DNA of 57,345 nucleotides, the filler included, from Bipalium vagum (Eukaryota): assembly GCA_037834085.1 (NCBI GenBank). It is 3 parts of 3 records of this genome, joined end to end, with 100 filler letters (N's around TTAATTAATTAA, not from the genome) between each part and the next. Parts side by side here need not be neighbours in the genome. Positions count along the whole stretch, not along the records: positions 37,415 to 57,345 come from JBBMKC010261223.1; 2 more parts are not named here. One strand, 5' to 3'. Positions 38,510 through 54,669 of the stretch are shown here, one piece after another. The notes under the pieces are model-generated. The model had not been told where the DNA came from. It worked only from the letters and a program-made list of their open reading frames with translations, and did no database searches. The translations under genes and the position numbers were made by a program. Position 1 is the first letter of the stretch, and each line of letters begins with the position of its first letter.

Positions 38510-39330
38510 TATCGGATTAAACGTGCAGTAGAAGCTGAAAAATGTACAAGGTGTATAAGAATGCATTAAAAGAACGCCGATGAAGAAACCGGTTTAAAAA
38601 ATTCCGAAAGGGTGATTCATTCAAAAATATAAAACGATCTCGTTGTTTACTAGATGTAAATAACGGCGAAATAAAAGACTTAATCAATGATATTTTTCAC
38701 AAAACAACGCTTAACGTTCTAAGGAATCTCACCATATCAAATGCAATCCTCAAAAACCATATCAAGCATATCAGTTACGCGAAAAACTCGATTTATGAGT
38801 TCTTTACCAACTTAAGGAAAATCAAATTTGTCAAAGGAATAAAAAAAACCTGAGATTTGCTTAATAAACATTATAAATAAAATAACCTACAAACAAATGG
38901 CAACGGAGAATCATAAATGGATTTGCTACAATAATGTTATTCGGAAAAATTATCATACAACTTTGTTGGGATTATCAAGGATTCATATATTTGGAACTTT
39001 CATTATATTAGTCAGTCAACAAAATTGCAAAAGTGCAGTGCACTCGGAATTCCTCACAAATGGACAAACAGTAAATAAAGAACATTGTTCAGGCATTATG
39101 AGAAGATTGTGATAGAATGTATGACGAAGACAATTCGATTTGTGGAAGGGAAATTAAAGAATTTTGCATCACGGTAATGCACGATCGCATAAATTCATCG
39201 TTGTGCAAGAACTTTTGAAAAAAAGAACCTAACAAGCGTCATCCAACAAGCACCCTATTCGTCTGATTTGACCCGTGAAATTTTTTTCTCGTGTCGAGGC
39301 AGATTTCATTACTTCGAGGAAAACGTTTCG
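38510..39330 (+). mobile_element. Composite of decayed mariner transposase fragments
   Basis: MATENHKWICYNNVIRK (a degenerate TGDEKW motif), then VHSEFLTNGQTVNKEH...ILHHGNARSH...QAPYSSDLT. Confidence 0.7.
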
Positions 39331-40629
39331 AATCAATTGACAAATGTTATTTCTTATTGACCAAATAAATTTTGATGAACAAATTATTTTATGTTCTATT
39401 ACAGAATTCCGAGTATCTTTCCCGAAGAGGGTATATAAATGAAACGATAACAGTTGGATTGTAACTGCTTTTCTCACTGACAATCAATTTTTATTTATTC
39501 CTGTGAAATAAAAATCTGCAATTCCGCATTTTCGGACACCTGGAAAAGGATATTTCTTTGAAAAAGGAAATTACCAAGGTCCCAGGAAAAATGGAAGTCT
39601 GTAGACGATATGTGGGGGATGCAAAAAGAATTAGGGGGCTCTTGAGTCAGTTCAAATGTTTCGAGAAATGCAATCTTATAATAGTGGTCAAAGATTTTTG
39701 AGATCAATAGTTATTTTATTAGGGTTATTCAACAAACCTTATTCAACTCTACCGTAACCTTCATTTTAATAACTCAGGTAACACCAAAATCATAAATTTA
39801 ACTGTTACAAAACTCTCAGTGTAATATTTGAACTTACAAGTGTTATTTTACTTTAGTATTTTAGTGAGTATTTTGTTTTATTAAATAGTTTAAGAAATCT
39901 TATACATATAAATCAATATTGTTTGGTAATGGTTGAAATAATTATTAATTTAAATATAAAAATAAATAAATAAACACAGAATAACACGAGATCTCCTAAA
40001 TAAAGAGGTGTCCATTATCAAAGAAAGTGATCCTTTCTCATTAGTTTCAGGTTTCGTTTCGAAACGAGCTTGAGTCGAGACTTCGGGGTCAATAATATTG
40101 AGGGCGAAAATTATTATCTACGCAATTAAAAAAAACGAAGACCCTAGCAAAAGGAGAAATAAAATACCTAATCAACATAAAAAATAATTAATAATTACAC
40201 TCATTGATATATTAAAAGTCGATGAGAAACAATTTTTCTCCTAATTCTGTTTCTGTTCTCAATTTTTTGTAAGAATTCAAATCAATTTACGAAGACTTCA
40301 ATTTACTTTTTTTCTTCTTCTACAAAATATTATTAAAGAAAATAATTGATTTCAGATGAATTTAATTTTTATTAATTAGAAATAATTGTAAAAGTAAATT
40401 TTGCAAAAATTTTATGTCAATTTCGGAAAAAAAATGACCTCAATTATTGCTTATTTTTTTAAATGTGTTTCAATCCATGAAAATGGTAAAATAAAAATCT
40501 ATTGAAAATAGTGTAATCAATTAAATTTTAAAAAATCAATAAACGGAATCAATTGATATATCAGTTCAAAGACCCGTGTTATATAGTTAAAAATTTTTAA
40601 ATCTTTTATAAAAAAAATTTAAAATATTA

Positions 40630-41240: not shown

Positions 41241-42707
41241 TGGTGGAACAAAACTCAAATTGCATTTTTTTCATCTGACATTTTTATAAAAAAAAAAAAA
41301 TTTAAGGTAATTGCACAACACAGTCTTGTACCAGAATTGATCCAACAAAGTTTTACATATGGTACCGAATTTCAAGATTTACTTACGATAGCAAATTAAG
41401 GTGATGAAGTTGGATTTAGCTTCAGTTTATGATCAAAACACAGAAGAACTTTAAAAGAATAAATACCGGTAAGATGTGTATCCACCTTACGATCACGAAT
41501 CATGAGTATTGCTGCTCAAAAAATGGACATGGCGATATAAATTACTGAGCATTATGAAATTTCCGGTATCATTTTGTTATTGAAGTTTAAAAGTTTCTTG
41601 TTCAGTTCAAAACATTTGTCAATGAACTTAAAACCCTGTATATGATTATAAATAATATATAATTATATAATAAAAATAACATTTAAAATAAAATACTCTT
41701 TTAATTTTAATTGGTTATTATTTAATAATATTTCAACAATAATAATGCCAGGACATTATAAAATAAATATCATTATAAAATTAAAAATTCCCGTGATCCG
41801 ATCACCCTCGCCAAAGAGTGATAAAATAAATGCCCTCTATTGCAGACCCATTCCCAAATATTGCTGTCATCAAAGTTTGCAGATTTTATGGGGGAAATAT
41901 TTCGAAAGTATAACTTTAATTGCTTTAATAAAGTCGTATTAGTTTCAGTGATTTTATCAAACTGAAATAAGTCAGGCAATGAGAGACTGCGATTTCCCAA
42001 ATAATTTAATTCATAATTTCCAGATTAAGTGTTTAAATTTGCGTTTTATTTTTTATTGATAATCTTCGAGATTCGAGAGGGAAATATTTGAGGAAATAAT
42101 TTCAGATTTCCAGTGAAGAAAATAAAATCAATTTTTAACTTTTTCATTCGGGCGAATCATTAATTGTTTTAATTTTTCTTTCACTGTTTTTATAGTACAT
42201 TAAAAATTATTATTATCCTCATTAATTTATGCTTCAATATTTTTTACGATTAATTCTATGAGGGACAGGGGTTAATTATAAAGATTTTTTATTATCAGAT
42301 GAATAGTAGAGTAATTATCATCTTATCTCTTCAGTATTTCTTTTAACTGAATATTTTAATGGAACTCCAGTAGAAAATTATGAAAGGCCTCTGTTAGACG
42401 TAATTATGTAATATGAATTAAAACATTAAGGGAACGTCTATTATATGTTGATACATAAGATTTTGAGTCAATTAGAATTATGAGTAGTGACATTGTGACC
42501 TGTGTCTTAGGCATGTGCAACAGTTTTAGCCCCGGAATTAGATTTGGGAAAAAATATGTTGCGGGCCGGACTAAATATTAAAATTCAAAATGGTAAATAA
42601 AACACGTTTTTTTATGTGGTGAGAATCCTTCCTTCGAATAATTAATTATAAGTGTGAGATATCTTGAAAATTAGTCGGGGGAAGTAGCTCACTAATTTTC
42701 ACTAACA

Positions 42708-42725
42708 TGGCGACCACACCAGGAC
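42708..42725 (+). promoter_or_regulatory. Primer-binding site complementary to a tRNA 3' end (tRNA-Arg type)
   Basis: Parses as TGG (anti-CCA) + C + GACCACA + CCAGG + AC, i.e. discriminator, 7-bp acceptor strand, 5-bp T-stem strand and T-loop end. It directly abuts the LTR terminal CA. Confidence 0.85.
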
Positions 42726-42863
42726 ACCAACCAGCGGACGAGGTCTCGGAAGTAAAAAGATCAAGGAATTGAATAGAAATAGAAGTAAAGAGACTCGGGG
42801 CGGTTAAGGGTATGGATGTGAGGTTTAAAGGAGGCGGATGTGAGATATCTTGAAAATTAGTCG

Positions 42864-42935
42864 GGGGATGTAGCTCAGCGGTCAGAGCAGTGCATGCGCA
42901 TGTGAAGGTTCCGGGTTCGAATCCCGGTATCTCCG
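42864..42935 (+). tRNA. tRNA-Ala-derived sequence within the 3' LTR (probably a Pol III promoter, not a translational tRNA)
   Basis: Acceptor stem GGGGATG/TATCTCC with G3:U70. D arm GCTC..GAGC with A box TAGCTCAGCGG. T arm CCGGG-TTCGAAT-CCCGG (B box). The anticodon arm is aberrant and the discriminator is G. Confidence 0.8.
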
Positions 42936-45900
42936 ATTAATTTTCACTAACAATAAGTAAATGATACCATAAAATTATCATAATAAATGATGCGAAATAA
43001 TTATACCGCGTGCACCACTAATTATGTTTTAATATCTGATTCTTTATTCGTAGTAGGTATTTTTAACACAACCTCCACATGTAAATCATTCAATCAATAG
43101 TTTGTTGAACTTTTATTTAAATTCATTAAAGAAAGGGTTTGTTTAGAATGATATGGTGAAATAACGTTAAAAAATACTTTGATAAGGTTTTAAAACTTTC
43201 TTAATTTTCATAACCAAACTTCGTGTAAAAATTACAGATTCACTTGATCTTTTTGATATTTCTCATATGAACACTCATCATATTGTAAATTAATTAATTA
43301 TTTATAATTATATATCAACAGGTACGTCATCAATTTTGGACAAAATGAATTTCGAAAGATGAATAATTTTTTATTCATTTTTTGAAACATTCAAAATCTA
43401 TCATTAACAAAGAACATTTTAATATTCTTTAATGATTGAGTCTTTCCTTTTAAAATATCTGCTAATATTGTCTGTAACGTTGGAAAAGGATCAAACTTAC
43501 ATTTGACTTGATTTTTAGCAAAAACTCTAAACTTCTATTTATAAGATTAAATCAATTTTCCACTTTCATTCTTCATTAAAATTTCAACATTTTATGTTGA
43601 ATTTTTGAAAGCATCCTGGGGGCGAATATGTACCTTAAACAACATTTTGAAAATCAAAAACATAACATACCCTATTAATATCTAAATTATATCGTATCTA
43701 ATTGAAGCAATATTAAATTTAAATAAAGAAAGAGATCACTATATTATAAATAAAACAAATATTTCGTTTAAACAAAGTTTGTGTGTTAAATAACAACTAA
43801 CAATAAAAATCGATCGATAATTCAATAATAATCGGAAGTTAGATATTAATATTGAAAATTTTTTCGCGGGCTGTATGTTGGTCTTGCTAAACAGTTTCCA
43901 GGGAATAATTGACCATAAATCAAAACATATCGACGTCTGAAAATTGAAAGACAACCTTATTTAAACAAAAAAAAACACGGGTTTAAAAAAATATTTTTTT
44001 AAAATTATTGTAATATTGCAAAATTCATTATTAAATGATTTATAAAATCCTCAAATTTCATTAAATTTCTAAGAATATTTTTGAAAACTACTTTCGCAAA
44101 TGCAGTTTCACTTGTACAACTCCAAAAGAAATAATATATCGCTTTCTTAGAATCCAATCAAATAAAATAAATTTAATTATTTTTTTTTCATAATTTTCTC
44201 TGCGAAAATTTGTAAGCTGAATTTGGGCTGATGAGGAAAATTCCATATTGAATTAGTATTAATATCCATATTTTTGATGGAAATCAGTTCATTATGCTCA
44301 AAGTAGCTTTGAGAATTTATATTCACAAGGGCGGGTATTAAACAAGTAGTCCTTTCTGTTTTTCCCAATTACCTAAAGTTGACCTTTTCATCGAATGATT
44401 GTCCTTTGGGTAATTATCCTTCAGATTCGAACGGTTTTCTTATGTAATTCTTAAAATAATGTCGTTTTATCACACTAACTTTAAATAATAAATAATAAAG
44501 AAATATTAAGAAATATATTTATAAGGAATATAAATATTAAAAATAAATAAAAAAAGATTAATAATGATAATAATAATAAAAAAAGAAATAAAAAAAAAGA
44601 AAAATATTTCTAATTTTCTTAAAAAGAGTTTAATTAAAATCCGATTAATTCTGAACAGATGGGTTAAATATTTTTTTGCCTGATTAGGCCTAAAGTAAAT
44701 ACATTTTGGGTAAAATTATTGATTGAAGTAATTACCTTTTCTTTAAGGTGGTATTGGTGCCTAAAATAAATATTTTTTAAAATTTTAATAATTTTTTCTT
44801 TTGCTTCTGTCAAGCCAGTGATGTTCATAGGGAGCGCACATCAATGATGACAGGTGAAAAGTCGGTCCAGGCCATAAATGCAGCTCTTAATCTGAGGAAA
44901 GATTACAGAGACAGAATTTTATTGAAAGTTCAACCAAAGTGAAAACTTTTAAAACACGAATAGATTGTATTTCAATTAAATAAGGTTTAAATGTGTGCAG
45001 CTGATTTTTCAAAATGGATGCACAGATTTCTTAAAATGTTACACTAAGGGTTCGTTGTCCATCCAGGAACCAAAAGGAAACTACTTAGTGAGCTCGTTTG
45101 GCATTTTCGTGGGTACGTTTTGTTCTTTTAATTAGTTTTTTTTATTTTTCATTTTAACTGGAATTTGAGTCTGAATTATTAATAATTTTTTGAATTATTA
45201 TTATATTTTTTGGGTATATCGTAAGTCAGTTCAGCATATAGTGTGGACAGGAACTAATTGAAGTTATTATCTTATTGTGAGTTTGAGTTATTGAAAAACA
45301 AAAGCGAAGAAATTAGATAGAACAACTTGGTTAATAAAAATATTAGAATAATCTTCAATGTGTGGTCAATGTACGTAAAAATTTAACCTAAATTTCATTA
45401 ATGCGATTTTCTTTCTACTTCACACACTCACAAGATTGAGAACAATTTCCTATTTTCCAAATCTTGATTTTTCAATTTCCTCCGTATCCTCAAGTCTGTT
45501 TACTATTGATTATTATTACAATATTTCAGCTTCCCAAATAAGTCGTAACCTTGACTGACTGTTAAACCTGACTTTTTCTCACCAATCTCTGATATCGTCG
45601 CCACTGAATTATCGATAATAACCCCTTTCTAATCGTTAGTTATTAGGATATCCTTGAGTACATAAATTCGTTACTTAGAAATGAATATTCTAAAAATTGA
45701 CGAACATTAATGAATGTACTCTCTCTGATAAATCAGTATAGCATCATGGTATCATGGTCGTTGTTTTGCTTATTTGGTCGACTATTGTCTTCTTTGGAAT
45801 GTAAAATAAACTTTTTCTTCTTTTGTGGCCAGGACATCGTTGCCAGTCACAATGGAAACCCTGTCACACAAAATAAATCTCATAAAGAATGTCGGAATAA

Positions 45901-46597
45901 ATTTGACTTATTGATTCAACCGCTTCAAATAACGTTTCCGCAGAATGAAATCCGCCAATCACGTGATTTCCGTGTTTTTTATCCGGTATTTTATGTCACT
46001 TTGAAAATGTTATTAAAAATATTCAAGTACGAATTCGAACTTTATATAATTGCAAATATAATCAAAAATTTTCAAAAAGTTCCCTGCCTGAAAAAAAATA
46101 ACAAGAAGCAGCATATGGAAAGAGGGAAAATAATTTTCAGAAATCAACAAAATATCACCTTGAGACAGTTGAAAAGTCTGGAAACAAAATAAAATAAATA
46201 TTAAAAAGAATATTAATGTTGCATAATTGGCAAATTTTCGTTTTCTTAATTACCAGAATTCATCGAAATTAATTTTTATTCAAGTCGATTTGATTTTTGT
46301 AATTACTATATTTTATTTAAAACTAATAACAGTCACAAGGAAATTTAATTACATTAAAACGAAAAATTTTATATTTTTCCTCTGATATTTTTCATTTATG
46401 AGGACGATTATTGAGAAAATACTTTCGTTAAAAATGAAACATTCTCATTTATTTCTTTTTTCTTGATTAAATTATTTCTATCGACCTTTTACAATGATAT
46501 TAATTATAAAGTGCGTTTTAAGAAATATTATTGACAAATAAATTTTGGAATCAATAGAGAATTTTTTGTTAATAATTATTTTAAAAATTAATAACTC

Positions 46598-46765
46598 TGT
46601 GTTGTGAGATTTAACTAATTGTGTGACGGGGTTGTCAGATTTAACTGGTAGCATCATGGGGTTGTCAGATTAAATTGGTTGTATAACGGGATTGTGAGAT
46701 TAAATTGGTTATTTATCGGGGTTGTCAGATTTAGATGGTTGTAAAAAGTGGTTGTCAGATTTAGT
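46598..46765 (+). repeat. Six-unit tandem array with a 30-bp period (GGGGTTGTSAGATTWARHTGGTT-N7)
   Basis: Units start at 46601, 46631, 46661, 46691, 46721 and 46751. Confidence 0.9.
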
Positions 46766-47718
46766 TAAAGATAGTAGTAATAGTCAAATAATAAGGAAAA
46801 TGGATCCATCATTTTTAGATAAATTAGCAGTTTTCAGCAATCTTGATTTGTCTGTTTGGCTAAGAAGAAAAGAATTGATTCAATTTGAACAAATCTGTGC
46901 TGACTGCAAATTTACAATGTCATTTAAGAGTGTTAAAGTGACATCAGATGGTTTTGTATGGAGATGCGATAACAATACCTGTAGAAAATATAAGTCCAGT
47001 CTAAGTAAAAGAACAGGTTTTTGGATTTCTGGATTTAAAATCAATATAAAAATACTTATAAGGGTAATAATTATTAAAATAATATTTTTATATTATTTAT
47101 TTAGGCAATGTATTTGTGGATAGAATATTGGATAGCTAATTCTATAATATTAGGAGGCCCTGATCAGACAGTGCAATGTGATGAAACAAAAATAAATCAC
47201 ATTGTCAAAGTTCACAGAGGAAGAACACCAATTGCACTTGGGTTTTAACCACTGTTGACACTTCTTTTAAACCCGCGAGAGGATACGCCGAAATTATACC
47301 CGATAAAAGAAGTGTCACAATTTTGCCTATTATAGAAAAGTTGGTTAAATTTGAATCAATAATTTATACAGATTAAGCCCGTTCTTACAACGTCTTGAGT
47401 CAGAAAGATTCTGGGTACAAACATAATACGGTTGTACATAAATACAATTTTGTTGATCCAGATACTGGCGTCCATACGCAAAATGTAGAAAGCTACAATA
47501 ACAAGTTAAAAAGAAAAATAAAAGATTGTCAAGGAATCGATGAAGACAAAAGAGAAGATTTTATTAATGAATTTATGTTCTTAGACTTGTTCAAAGAAAA
47601 TTCATTTAATGAAATATTTTTATTGTTAAAATTTAATAAATTTCTGGTTTAATTAATTTTTTTCATTTATTTTATGAAATATTCTTTTTTTAGTGTTGTG
47701 TTAATTTGTCCAAAAATT

Positions 47719-47832
47719 TGGGGTTGTGAAATTAAATTGGTTATTTATCGGGTTGTCAGATTTAGCTGGTTGTAAAAAGGGGTTGTGAGATTTAACTGGT
47801 TGTGTAACGGGGTTGTCAGATTTAATTCGTCC
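47719..47832 (+). repeat. Four-unit array of the same 30-bp repeat, in the same orientation as the left array
   Basis: Units start at about 47723, 47752, 47782 and 47812. Confidence 0.9.
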
Positions 47833-49639
47833 ACAATTTCTTATTTGCATTTTTTGGAATATTATTTGAATTTCCGTCATTTGATTGAAATATTAAAACA
47901 AAAAATATGTATATGTTTATATTAATTAGCGATTATCTGCAATTTAAAATTTACTCAATAAAAAAAATTCATTTAGTTTCAGGCACTTTTTTAACTTCCG
48001 CACGCTTATAATAATATTAATAATAATTATTATAATAATTATAATAATAAATAAAAAATAATATTAATTTAAGGGACGTAAATTATAAATAAATAAATTA
48101 TAAATAATTTATGAAATATATAATTTTAATAATGCATCTGTGTAACTGAAATAAAATTAATTTATTAATTTAAATCACTAAAATCTGCCTACCTCTATAA
48201 TTAATGAGAATTAATCAATACACTAAGTTGCCCACACACTCATGTCACAAAAGAAAGAACACGTTAAGTGATTATTAATTAAATAATGAATATTTGGAAT
48301 AATGCAATTTTCATTTGGAAAATAATTTATTTTACCAAAAATAATTTATTTTACAATTATACAAAGTCACTGATGCGAACACCTTAGCTTGGCCGTTATG
48401 AATTAATCTTCACAAGGCTGTGCCCGTAGTGAATAAAATATTTATGTTCGCGATTCAACTAAGGAATTTGGCAAAAAAATTCTTTCAGAAGATGCTCAAA
48501 TTTTTTCTTTTTCAAAGAAAAAATGGTTGAAAAATTATTTTTGTTTTTCCCAACAATGGAAGAAAAACAAATCCATTATTCAAGGATGCCCAAGCAACCA
48601 ATTGGTTTCCCTGTTTTGCTTTATTTTTGAACCTGGAGAAAGTAAACAACGACGTCTGTTGAACATTTGAAGGAAAAAGACAGAACGGACATCTCCAGGA
48701 AAAGAAGACAAATAATAATTCGTAGAAATGAAAAAGAATTTCAACAGTTAACACATCTTTTCAAATGAAAATATTACTTTATGGTTACCCAATCGATTAA
48801 TTATTTTTATGATTTTAATTAATGAATGAAAGTAATTTTTTCAATAATTACCCGTCCATTAACTTTGAATTCAACCATTAAAACTGTTCAAATTTGGAAA
48901 AATCCTAGAACCGAAGGATTTTAAATCAAAGCAAAAATGATAAATTCTTACTAATTTTTGTTTATTTAAACCTGATAAAAATGGCGCGAAAATTAAGCGA
49001 TTTTGAAACAAGTACAGAATGTTTATGGAAAGTGATTTTAATTAATTTAATGACTTCGTGGAACTCCTTGAACAATAAAGCTCTATTGAAGAGTTCATCA
49101 TCAGCTTAGCCTAAAGCTGGTTATTAGGTAATAATTGACTTAAATCTGATATGGATTAGGTGATCTCATTAACCTTCTTTGGATGTTTACAGAAAAATAT
49201 AATCTGTGTTCAGAACCATTGCGTAATGTGTTTTAATATGGACAACATTTCATATGACATTGTCTAATCAGAACCATAACAAATTAATTAATCTCCTTTT
49301 TCCTCGCTCACTCCGTCGAATAATTATACATAATAAACCATTTCCGAATAAATGACAGCCCTAATTCAATGTGAACAATTGAATTATATAACATATATTG
49401 TGTGCATATGTTGAAAGTGACCTTTTGCCTAAATTAGCGGTTTTATTAAAACTAATTTACTTGTTTAAGCAAATCAATTTATTTTTATGTTGTGTGAATA
49501 TTGTTCGAAATTATTTTCAGTAAAAAATGTTCGATTAAGTGTAATATATTTTTTTCATATACATTGGGATGGTGGCATATGTACCAAATAATCACTTTTA
49601 TTATCAGGAAAATCTTTTTCCAAAGCCCACAGATTACTT

Positions 49640-54183: not shown

Positions 54184-54669
54184 CAAGGTGTGCCATAAGT
54201 TCCCGCGAAAATTAAGCTAATATTTCTTAAGCAGATTGAAATATTTAATCGCTTTCTTTATAAAATTAAAGACAAATCTTTTAATTTTTATTTCATATAA
54301 AAATATTTACAACAATTGTCTGAAATGACCACCATTAACTGATATACATAAATTCATCCTTTTTACAATATTTAAAAATACGATATTCAAAGTTTCTGTG
54401 GTAAAACTTTGTATTTCTTTGGTGATTTTTGTTTTTAAATCGTCAATATTTTTGATTTCAGATTTGTATATCTTATTCTTTGGCCCCATAAATAGAAGTC
54501 AATAGGAGTTAAATCTGTGATTTTGAAGACCGCCGAATTGAATCATCTCTCTCACAATCCACCTGTTCGGAAAATGAGCGACAAGATATCGTCGTAGATT
54601 TTTGAAAAATGCTCAGGAGCTCCATCTTGCTGAAATACCAGAGACCGTACTTTGTACATTTTCCTCACT
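54184..54669 (-). mobile_element. Partial second copy (3' end) of the rosa-like family at 26419-27714
   Basis: Long near-identical stretches shared with 26419-26897, such as GTTTTTAAATCGTCAATATTTTTGATTTCAGATTTGTATATCTTATTCTTT. It retains VFQQDGAP. Confidence 0.88.

What the first reader, a model, noticed from the sequence alone, without database searches (positions are those of the whole stretch)
42648..42957. Complete miniature LTR retrotransposon whose LTR is built from a tRNA gene (Pol III-type TRIM)
Seen: ATAAG | 5' LTR (42653-42707, TG..CA) | 18-nt tRNA PBS | about 100 bp non-coding | PPT | 3' LTR (42839-42952, TG..CA) | ATAAG. Of the 114-bp intact LTR, 72 bp is a tRNA-Ala-like cassette with A and B boxes. 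Known: plant Cassandra TRIMs carry 5S rRNA in their LTRs. From memory, a tRNA-carrying TRIM group (Helenus) has been reported, with 4-bp TSDs in its animal members, so the general design may not be new. Inference: this is a SINE/LTR hybrid, transcribed by Pol III but packaged and integrated by an autonomous LTR partner. The 5-bp TSD, Ala cassette and Arg-type primer in an animal genome suggest an independent, possibly undescribed family. A tRNA scanner would likely report it only as a tRNA pseudogene.
Basis: partly seen in the sequence, partly recalled or inferred. Interest (0 to 1): 0.9.

Follow-up and report, generated by a model that had tools for sequence, protein, structure and literature searches.

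The report
tRNA-carrying miniature LTR retrotransposon (Helenus type)
This is a real, dead copy of a very abundant 300-bp non-coding LTR retrotransposon whose repeats are built around a degenerate tRNA-Ala gene, a design already described in 2024 as "Helenus", so it is a new member of a known kind rather than a new kind of element.

Summary
The layout is ATAAG, a 55-bp 5' LTR, an 18-nt TGG-initiated PBS, 131 bp of non-coding internal region ending in a purine tract, a 114-bp 3' LTR, then ATAAG. The 3' LTR holds a 72-nt tRNA-like cassette (Rfam tRNA 46.7 bits). It has intact A and B boxes, the Ala-type G3:U70 pair, a collapsed anticodon loop and a TTTT run just downstream. The 5' LTR is the same sequence minus 59 bp, including the B box.

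In the one public run holding this locus, 4,534 contigs match the element at 80% or better. Summed depth rises from about 20 in the flanks to 10^4-3x10^5 inside, with sharp edges at the LTR ends. Hundreds of contigs leave the LTR ends into unrelated AT-rich flanks, and other copies join a full-length LTR to the PBS.

Structurally it meets the definition of Helenus/TRIMp3 (Kojima 2024). None of its signature motifs occurs in that paper's consensus set.

- Pol III transcription is inferred, not shown.
- The 5-bp TSD rests on one copy. A 4-bp TSD plus one chance A is not excluded.
- The host could only be narrowed to a probable metazoan.

The parts
42648..42652 (+). left target-site duplication ATAAG
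   Evidence: Identical to 42953-42957. Chance of a 5/5 match is about 0.003 at the piece's base composition. The length could be 4 bp (TAAG) plus one chance A.
42653..42707 (+). 5' LTR, internally deleted (55 bp). It keeps the first 39 nt and the last 15 nt of the LTR and lacks 59 bp, including most of the tRNA-like cassette and the B box.
   Evidence: Alignment and BLAST against the 3' LTR. Other copies carry a full-length LTR in front of the PBS: joints 42946->42701 and the loose end at 42701.
42708..42725 (+). primer-binding site, 18 nt starting TGG directly after the LTR's CA
   Evidence: Sequence. No variant at 5% or more of depth across 42708-42730 among thousands of related contigs, and the highest depth of the internal region. 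The tRNA isotype (Arg-like from memory) is not verified.
42726..42826 (+). non-coding internal spacer, purine-rich (15% T), without any TTTT
   Evidence: Composition and T4 scan. No ORF of 45 aa or more on the sense strand. Most of the variable positions among copies lie here: 13 sites between 42731 and 42823.
42827..42838 (+). polypurine tract abutting the 3' LTR (11 of 12 purines in this copy)
   Evidence: Sequence. At 42835 most related contigs read G where this copy has C, so the tract is uninterrupted purine in most copies.
42839..42952 (+). 3' LTR, full length (114 bp, TG..CA). It consists of a 25-nt upstream part, the tRNA-like cassette, a T4 run and an 8-nt tail.
   Evidence: Sharp depth edges, plus 180 contigs leaving leftwards at 42839 and 164+38 leaving rightwards at 42946/42952 into unrelated AT-rich sequence.
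42864..42935 (+). tRNA-Ala-derived cassette. A box is 42871-42881, B box is 42914-42924, the acceptor stem has G3:U70, and the anticodon arm has collapsed to a 2-nt loop.
   Evidence: Rfam RF00005 46.7 bits over model positions 1-71. ARAGORN gives tRNA-??? with anticodon '(cg)'. No variant at 5% or more inside either box among related contigs.
42941..42944 (+). TTTT, a Pol III-type terminator 6 nt after the cassette. The same run sits at 42696-42699 in the 5' LTR.
   Evidence: Sequence. It is the only TTTT in the LTR, and there is none in the 241 nt between the two runs. Only 3% of 241-nt windows of the piece lack TTTT, but this is confounded by the element's higher GC.
42851..42863 (+). 5' arm of a 13-14-nt inverted repeat that brackets the cassette. 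Its partner is 42934-42946, which contains the T4 run.
   Evidence: BLAST self-hits. The MFE fold of the LTR RNA pairs the arms as a 14-bp stem, dG -37.9 kcal/mol, z -3.27, with 0 of 200 shuffles as stable. Both arms survive in the deleted 5' LTR as a perfect 11-nt pair.
42953..42957 (+). right target-site duplication ATAAG

Best explanation
The locus is one insertion of a non-autonomous LTR retrotransposon of the TRIM class whose LTR is built around a degenerate tRNA-Ala gene, that is, a Helenus-type 'TRIMp3' element. It encodes nothing. It carries only the cis signals an LTR element needs: TG..CA LTR ends for an integrase, a tRNA-complementary PBS for minus-strand priming, and a polypurine tract for plus-strand priming. 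It must therefore be copied and inserted by the proteins of an autonomous LTR retrotransposon in the same genome. The only recognisable promoter in the 114-bp LTR is the internal Pol III promoter (A and B boxes) of the tRNA-like cassette, which is followed by a T4 terminator. The likely genomic RNA starts at or just upstream of the cassette in the 5' LTR, reads through that LTR's weak T4 run, and ends at the T4 run of the 3' LTR. On that reading, the cassette plus trailer acts as the repeated R region (inferred, not shown). This copy is dead as a source element because its 5' LTR has lost 59 bp including the B box. Its 3' LTR could still give a short tRNA-like Pol III transcript. The family is very abundant in the host, with LTR sequence far more abundant than internal sequence. 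That pattern fits many solo LTRs and/or further families or SINEs sharing the cassette.
For: Anatomy: searches show the LTRs, TSD, PBS and PPT. tRNA origin: (Rfam 46.7 bits, full model). The acceptor stem with G3:U70 and the CGC-containing anticodon region are read directly from the sequence. Mobility and copy number: 4,534 contigs of run X1 match at 80% or better. Summed depth is 16-24 in the flanks against 6x10^3-3.4x10^5 inside, with edges at about 42650 and 42952. There are 180 loose ends to the left at 42839 and 202 to the right at 42946/42952, running into unlike AT-rich sequence (agreement 0.44-0.54). Joints link a full LTR end to the PBS. Constraint pattern among copies: no variant at 5% or more in the PBS, A box or B box, and the PPT is all-purine in most copies, whereas 13 variable sites lie in the internal spacer. 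There is no room for a Pol II promoter: only 25 nt lie upstream of the cassette. T4 runs occur only directly after the cassette. The design and dimensions match published Helenus families, whose LTRs are 104-323 bp, internal parts 43-621 bp and totals 311-1263 bp.
Against: There is no transcript evidence of any kind. Pol III would have to read through an identical T4 run in the 5' LTR. The autonomous partner is unknown and nothing like it lies in the 20-kb piece. The PBS could not be matched to a real host tRNA. The depth figures come from summed contig k-mer depths, which the tool warns are not copy numbers. The excess over the cassette may include unrelated tRNA-derived repeats.
Confidence: 0.85

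Rival explanations
1. It is an ordinary Pol II-transcribed TRIM, or is read through from neighbouring genes. On this reading the tRNA-like cassette is a passenger, for example the relic of a SINE or tRNA retro-insertion into an ancestral LTR, and plays no promoter role.
For: No RNA data exist. A T4 terminator directly after the cassette in the 5' LTR would stop most Pol III transcripts before the PBS. Cassandra, the only validated TRIMp3 lineage, is the sole precedent for Pol III transcripts.
Against: Only 25 nt precede the cassette in the LTR, which leaves no room for a Pol II promoter plus R. The A and B boxes show no common variants among thousands of contigs, while the anticodon arm has decayed. 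The 241 nt between the two T4 runs are free of TTTT in a genome where 97% of such windows contain one.
Confidence: 0.2
2. The high copy number comes mainly from tandem (LTR-internal)n arrays or satellite-like amplification rather than from dispersed retrotransposition.
For: The 'goes back about 246' joints would also be produced by LTR-internal-LTR-internal arrays. Tandem arrays are reported for the zebrafish Helenus LTR-11_DR.
Against: Hundreds of contigs leave both LTR ends into unlike AT-rich flanks. This copy is a single two-LTR unit with a TSD in single-copy DNA (flank depth 16-24).
Confidence: 0.05
3. It is a tRNA-Ala pseudogene with a chance or segmental local duplication, not a mobile element.
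For: ARAGORN and Rfam on their own report only a tRNA.
Against: The reading is contradicted by the TG..CA repeats, PBS, PPT and TSD, by the 0 chance expectation for the repeat, and by thousands of related contigs bounded exactly at the LTR ends.
Confidence: 0.01

Closest known systems
Helenus (TRIMp3), Kojima 2024, Biology 13:119 (PMC10886601)
   Same: It is a short non-coding LTR element whose LTR contains a tRNA-derived sequence with conserved A box (TRGCY..YGG) and B box (GGTTC). It has a PBS and PPT, TG..CA ends, and a tRNA that is unlikely to be functional. Its size (114/131/359 bp if both LTRs were full) is within the published range and closest to the smallest families.
   Different: None of its signature motifs is in the paper's consensus file: the Ala acceptor start, the LTR start and end, and the PBS decamer. 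No published family has a PBS with this decamer; the nearest listed share only TGGCGAC and are assigned to Ser-GCT. This copy shows a 5/5 flank repeat, whereas all animal families with a determined TSD length listed there make 4-bp TSDs. Abundance looks far higher than in the wasp families (9-170 LTRs) and is more like zebrafish LTR-11_DR. A 13-14-nt inverted repeat brackets the cassette.
Ajax (nemertean TRIMp3 with a 5S rRNA promoter), same paper
   Same: It is an animal TRIM with a small-RNA Pol III promoter in the LTR and 5-bp TSDs.
   Different: Ajax carries a 5S fragment, not a tRNA, and uses a tRNA-Leu PBS.
Cassandra (plant TRIM with 5S rRNA in the LTR)
   Same: The logic is the same: a Pol III small-RNA gene inside the LTR of a TRIM, with 5-bp TSDs as in plant TRIMs.
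   Different: Cassandra carries 5S rRNA rather than tRNA, occurs only in plants, and is 565-860 bp long.
PbTRIM (ant TRIM, Zhou and Cahan 2012, PMC3532108)
   Same: It is an animal, AT-rich-target TRIM with PBS, PPT and abundant solo LTRs.
   Different: No tRNA cassette is reported. It has 152-184-bp LTRs, a Leu PBS and 4-bp TSDs.
tRNA-derived SINEs (SINE2)
   Same: Both have a degenerate tRNA head with A and B boxes, a T-run terminator and high copy number.
   Different: SINEs have no LTRs, PBS or PPT and are mobilised by LINE target-primed reverse transcription. This element has all the LTR-element signals.

Membership tests
Helenus / TRIMp3 | Short non-autonomous LTR retrotransposon (TRIM) without coding capacity | tested here: met
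   300 bp between the TSDs. No sense-strand ORF of 45 aa or more. The antisense 96-codon frame has no relatives.
Helenus / TRIMp3 | Two direct LTRs with TG..CA ends | tested here: met
   The 5' LTR carries a 59-bp internal deletion.
Helenus / TRIMp3 | tRNA-derived sequence inside the LTR with conserved A box (TRGCY, YGG) and B box (GGTTC) | tested here: met
   Rfam tRNA 46.7 bits and ARAGORN. The A box at 42871-42881 matches 10 of 11 consensus positions. The B box at 42914-42924 matches 11 of 11.
Helenus / TRIMp3 | PBS next to the 5' LTR, complementary to a cellular tRNA | tested here: inconclusive
   An 18-mer starting TGG lies directly after the LTR and is invariant among related contigs. 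No host tRNA was available for matching, so the Arg-type assignment rests on memory only.
Helenus / TRIMp3 | Polypurine tract next to the 3' LTR | tested here: met
   42827-42838 has 11 of 12 purines. Most other copies read G at the one pyrimidine.
Helenus / TRIMp3 | Interspersed multi-copy family with target-site duplications | tested here: met
   4,534 related contigs, with loose ends at both LTR boundaries running into unlike flanks. This copy has a TSD. TSDs of other copies could not be read.
Helenus, animal lineages as published | 4-bp TSD (Gypsy-type partner) | tested here: inconclusive
   This copy shows a 5/5 repeat. A 4-bp TSD plus one chance A (p about 0.37) is not excluded. My estimate is about one in three that the family makes 5-bp TSDs.
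Helenus, any catalogued family | Sequence similarity to a published consensus | tested here: not met
   Ten of eleven signature motifs searched had no relevant hit in DataS1.fa, and the eleventh (the generic B-box/T-arm string) occurred only in bivalve families. Motifs split by a line break would be missed, and Repbase and Dfam are not available here. Helenus is defined by structure and is thought to be polyphyletic, so this does not exclude membership of the group.
TRIMp3 as a functional class | Transcription from the Pol III promoter in the LTR | not testable with these tools
   No RNA run holds the locus.
Cassandra / Ajax | 5S rRNA-derived sequence in the LTR | tested here: not met
   The Rfam scan of the piece finds tRNA only and no 5S.
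SINE2 | tRNA head with a LINE-type tail, without LTRs, PBS or PPT | tested here: not met
   LTRs, PBS and PPT are present.

The most novel reading that the evidence does not exclude
This may be an independently born animal Helenus lineage, derived from tRNA-Ala, that makes 5-bp TSDs. It would then be mobilised by a Copia, BEL/Pao or 5-bp-type Gypsy partner rather than by the 4-bp Gypsy partners inferred for all published animal Helenus. It would have reached 10^3-10^4 copies. It would use the leader-trailer stem around the cassette, which forms only when the upstream arm is transcribed (that is, in the 3' LTR), to tell the 3' terminator from the identical 5' one.
Probability: 0.25. Interest if true: 0.5.

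Novelty: new member of a known kind. Interest (0 to 1): 0.3.

Why it matters
The locus shows that tRNA-carrying TRIMs can reach very high copy number in another, very AT-rich, probably metazoan genome. Thousands of such cassettes would inflate tRNA pseudogene counts and scatter Pol III promoter and TFIIIC sites across that genome. If the 5-bp TSD holds for the family, it would be the first animal Helenus with a non-4-bp integrase partner. That would support repeated, independent births of the design. It does not open a new class of element, because Kojima (2024) already defined one.

Tried and rejected
- **Other copies for a TSD census:** Exact-pattern scans for the LTR/tRNA junction and for the collapsed anticodon signature found nothing in metagenome, viral or prokaryotic genome contigs. 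The antisense 96-codon frame across the element has no predicted-protein relatives. ORFs of the neighbouring transposon are not on record and have no close homologues. No further copy or solo LTR lies in the 20-kb piece. TSD length therefore rests on one copy.
- **Host identity:** The run's organism is coded.
  - The IS1595-like ORF has only distant relatives at 45% identity or less; the named ones come from a krill.
  - Atlas neighbours of two transposase relics are eukaryotic, mostly metazoan.
  - One exon-like ORF gives a weak, sub-threshold hit to a metazoan C2_SYDE domain.
  - Conclusion: probably a metazoan. The phylum could not be determined.
- **Recalled fact:** My recollection that the ant PbTRIM makes 5-bp TSDs was wrong. 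The paper says 4 bp.
- **Cloverleaf fold:** A free-energy fold of the cassette alone does not give a cloverleaf better than shuffles (z -0.92). The tRNA call rests on the covariance model instead.
- **Weak Rfam hits:** The hits mir-3747 and bxd_1 are far below gathering scores and were dismissed.
Full report
**Observation**

- ATAAG (42648-42652) precedes a 55-bp repeat that starts TG and ends CA (42653-42707).
- The next 18 bases start TGG (42708-42725).
- The internal region runs to 42838 and ends in a purine tract (42827-42838, 11 of 12 purines).
- A 114-bp repeat with the same TG..CA ends follows (42839-42952), and then ATAAG again (42953-42957).

The first 39 nt of the two repeats differ at one base and the last 15 nt are identical. 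The left repeat lacks 59 bp in between. The 30-nt repeat start occurs twice in the window, against none in 100 shuffles. The piece is 26% G+C, so a 5/5 flank match has a chance of about 0.003. The element stands out as a 46-51% G+C island.

**The tRNA-like cassette**

ARAGORN reports one tRNA in the piece, at 42864-42935, with no assignable anticodon. Rfam's tRNA model matches the same 72 nt over its full length at 46.7 bits (gathering score 29, E 2.5e-7).

Read directly from the sequence:
- The acceptor stem pairs G1-C72, G2-C71, G3-U70, G4-C69, A5-U68, U6-A67 and G7-U66. The G3:U70 pair is the established identity mark of tRNA-Ala.
- The A box (42871-42881) fits the consensus at 10 of 11 positions, and the B box (42914-42924) at 11 of 11.
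- The anticodon arm has collapsed into a 6-bp stem with a 2-nt loop, so the RNA cannot decode.
- A TTTT run follows 6 nt after the cassette (42941-42944).

In the 5' LTR the deletion removes everything after the first seven bases of the A box, including the B box.

**Is it mobile?**

One public run holds this stretch (0.94 of sampled words, organism coded). Laying its contigs on 42350-43249 at 80% likeness or better gave 4,534 matching contigs.
- Summed contig depth is 24 to the left and 17-34 in most bins to the right of the element, apart from a small unrelated bump at 43100-43159. Inside the element it is 6x10^3-4.6x10^4 over the internal part, about 9x10^4 over the start of the LTR, and 2.5-3.4x10^5 over the cassette.
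- The edges fall at the LTR ends.
- 180 contigs leave the LTR start (42839) leftwards, and 164+38 leave its end (42946/42952) rightwards. They run into AT-rich sequence with only 0.44-0.54 agreement, that is, into different flanks.
- Many contigs join the end of a full-length LTR to the PBS (joints 42946->42701, and the loose end at 42701 whose consensus is the missing LTR 3' part). The deletion in the 5' LTR is therefore private to this copy.

The tool warns that these depths are not copy numbers. I take them only as showing an abundant, dispersed family in which LTR sequence far outnumbers internal sequence. That fits solo LTRs, or other repeats sharing the cassette.

**Constraint among copies**

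In the same table, variants carried by 5% or more of depth cluster in the internal spacer: 13 sites between 42731 and 42823. There are none in the PBS (42708-42730), none in the A or B box, and only two within the cassette (42892 and 42910). At 42835, the one pyrimidine in this copy's purine tract, most other contigs read G. At 42848/42849 both LTRs of this copy share letters that most contigs do not, which marks a sub-family rather than decay after insertion. This pattern is what cis-acting signals would show, although alignment at 80% or better and master-copy dynamics can mimic it.

**How it most likely works**

Shown here: the element has the full set of cis signals of an LTR retrotransposon and no coding capacity. 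It therefore depends on an autonomous element for reverse transcriptase and integrase.

Inferred:
- The promoter is the internal Pol III promoter of the cassette, because only 25 nt lie upstream of it in the LTR.
- The T4 run sits where a tRNA gene's terminator would be.
- The 241 nt between the T4 runs of the two LTRs contain no TTTT. Only 3% of 241-nt windows of this piece lack one. This is weak evidence, because the element is richer in G+C.
- A genomic RNA would start at the cassette in the 5' LTR, read through that LTR's T4 run and stop at the 3' one. The cassette plus trailer would then be the repeated R region, and the last 8 nt would be U5.

This copy has lost the B box of its 5' LTR, so it cannot be a source copy under this model. 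No RNA run is on record for the locus, so the Pol III step is untested.

**An extra feature**

The cassette is bracketed inside the LTR by a 13-14-nt inverted repeat, 42851-42863 against 42934-42946.
- The minimum-energy fold of the LTR RNA pairs the two arms as a 14-bp stem extending the acceptor stem (dG -37.9 kcal/mol, z -3.27, 0 of 200 shuffles as stable).
- The 3' arm contains the T4 run.
- The two arms survive as a perfect 11-nt pair in the deleted 5' LTR.
- The C/T difference between the two LTRs in the arm, and the 42856 A>G variant, both keep pairing (G-C or G-U).
- A transcript starting at the cassette would lack the upstream arm in the 5' LTR but contain it in the 3' LTR. The stem could therefore distinguish the two otherwise identical terminators. 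This is speculation.

**Comparison with what is known**

Kojima (2024, PMC10886601) defined Helenus as TRIMs with a tRNA-derived sequence in the LTRs. That paper grouped Helenus with Cassandra and Ajax as TRIMp3.
- The definition is structural, and multiple origins by SINE insertion into an LTR are proposed.
- Published families span fungi, one lycophyte and six animal phyla. LTRs are 104-323 bp and internal parts 43-621 bp.
- This element (114 and 131 bp) fits, at the small end.
- Every animal Helenus with a determined TSD length in that table makes 4-bp TSDs, and Gypsy partners are inferred. Fungal and plant Helenus, and the nemertean Ajax, make 5 bp.

Eleven signature motifs of this element were searched in the paper's consensus FASTA and PBS figure. 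The generic B-box/T-arm string matched only bivalve families. The acceptor start, LTR start, LTR end and PBS decamer had no occurrence. The three shorter strings hit only unrelated sequence. The family is therefore not one of those published, within the limits of a line-wrapped text search and without Repbase or Dfam.

**TSD length**

One copy cannot separate a 5-bp TSD from a 4-bp TAAG plus a chance A. The chance of that A is about 0.37 in this genome. Given that animal TRIMs checked here make 4 bp (Helenus; the ant PbTRIM), I put about one in three on a true 5-bp family. I could not obtain other copies.

**Host**

The host could not be identified. The neighbouring transposase relics have only distant relatives. 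The named relatives are from a krill, and the atlas neighbours are eukaryotic and mostly metazoan. One exon-like ORF weakly resembles a metazoan C2_SYDE domain, below threshold. A metazoan host is likely. I could not test whether it lies in a lineage already known to carry Helenus.

**Verdict**

It is a member of an already described kind (Helenus/TRIMp3), probably an uncatalogued family. The Pol III mechanism, the Arg primer, the 5-bp TSD and the partner element remain inferences.

Noticed in passing
window 46569-47860: An ISXO2/IS1595-like (Merlin-type) transposase pseudogene lies here. Its ORFs are 46722-47123 (zinc-ribbon part) and 47395-47652 (Pfam PF12762, E 3e-4, below the cut-off). It is flanked on both sides by direct, not inverted, arrays of a 30-bp repeat (46599-46769 and 47720-47830). 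The nearest named relatives, at 30-35% identity, are from the krill Meganyctiphanes norvegica.
   Followed up: partly
window 38843-39357 (+) and 54310-54498 (-): Decayed Tc1/mariner-like transposase relics. The second ends in a '..NGGHF..LL' tail, and its atlas neighbours are Tc1-like DDE fragments from metazoans.
   Followed up: partly
window 44781-44939 (+): A short exon-like ORF gives a weak hit to the C2 domain of the synapse-defective Rho GAP family (PF25336, E 0.008, 16.7 bits against a cut-off of 27). It may be a host exon. If so, the TRIM lies about 1.8 kb upstream of it or in an intron of that gene.
   Followed up: no
window 42860-42949 versus 42839-42859: Summed contig depth over the tRNA-like cassette is about three times that over the upstream part of the same LTR. 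A second population of 92 contigs diverges at 42906 into a different tRNA 3' half. This suggests sister families or a SINE sharing the cassette.
   Followed up: no
window 42747: Five related contigs continue after 42747 into a long A-rich run instead of the rest of the internal region. They may be a variant with an expanded A tract.
   Followed up: no
window 43100-43159: A small depth bump (250-340 against about 20 in neighbouring bins) lies 150 bp to the right of the element. It marks another short repeat.
   Followed up: no
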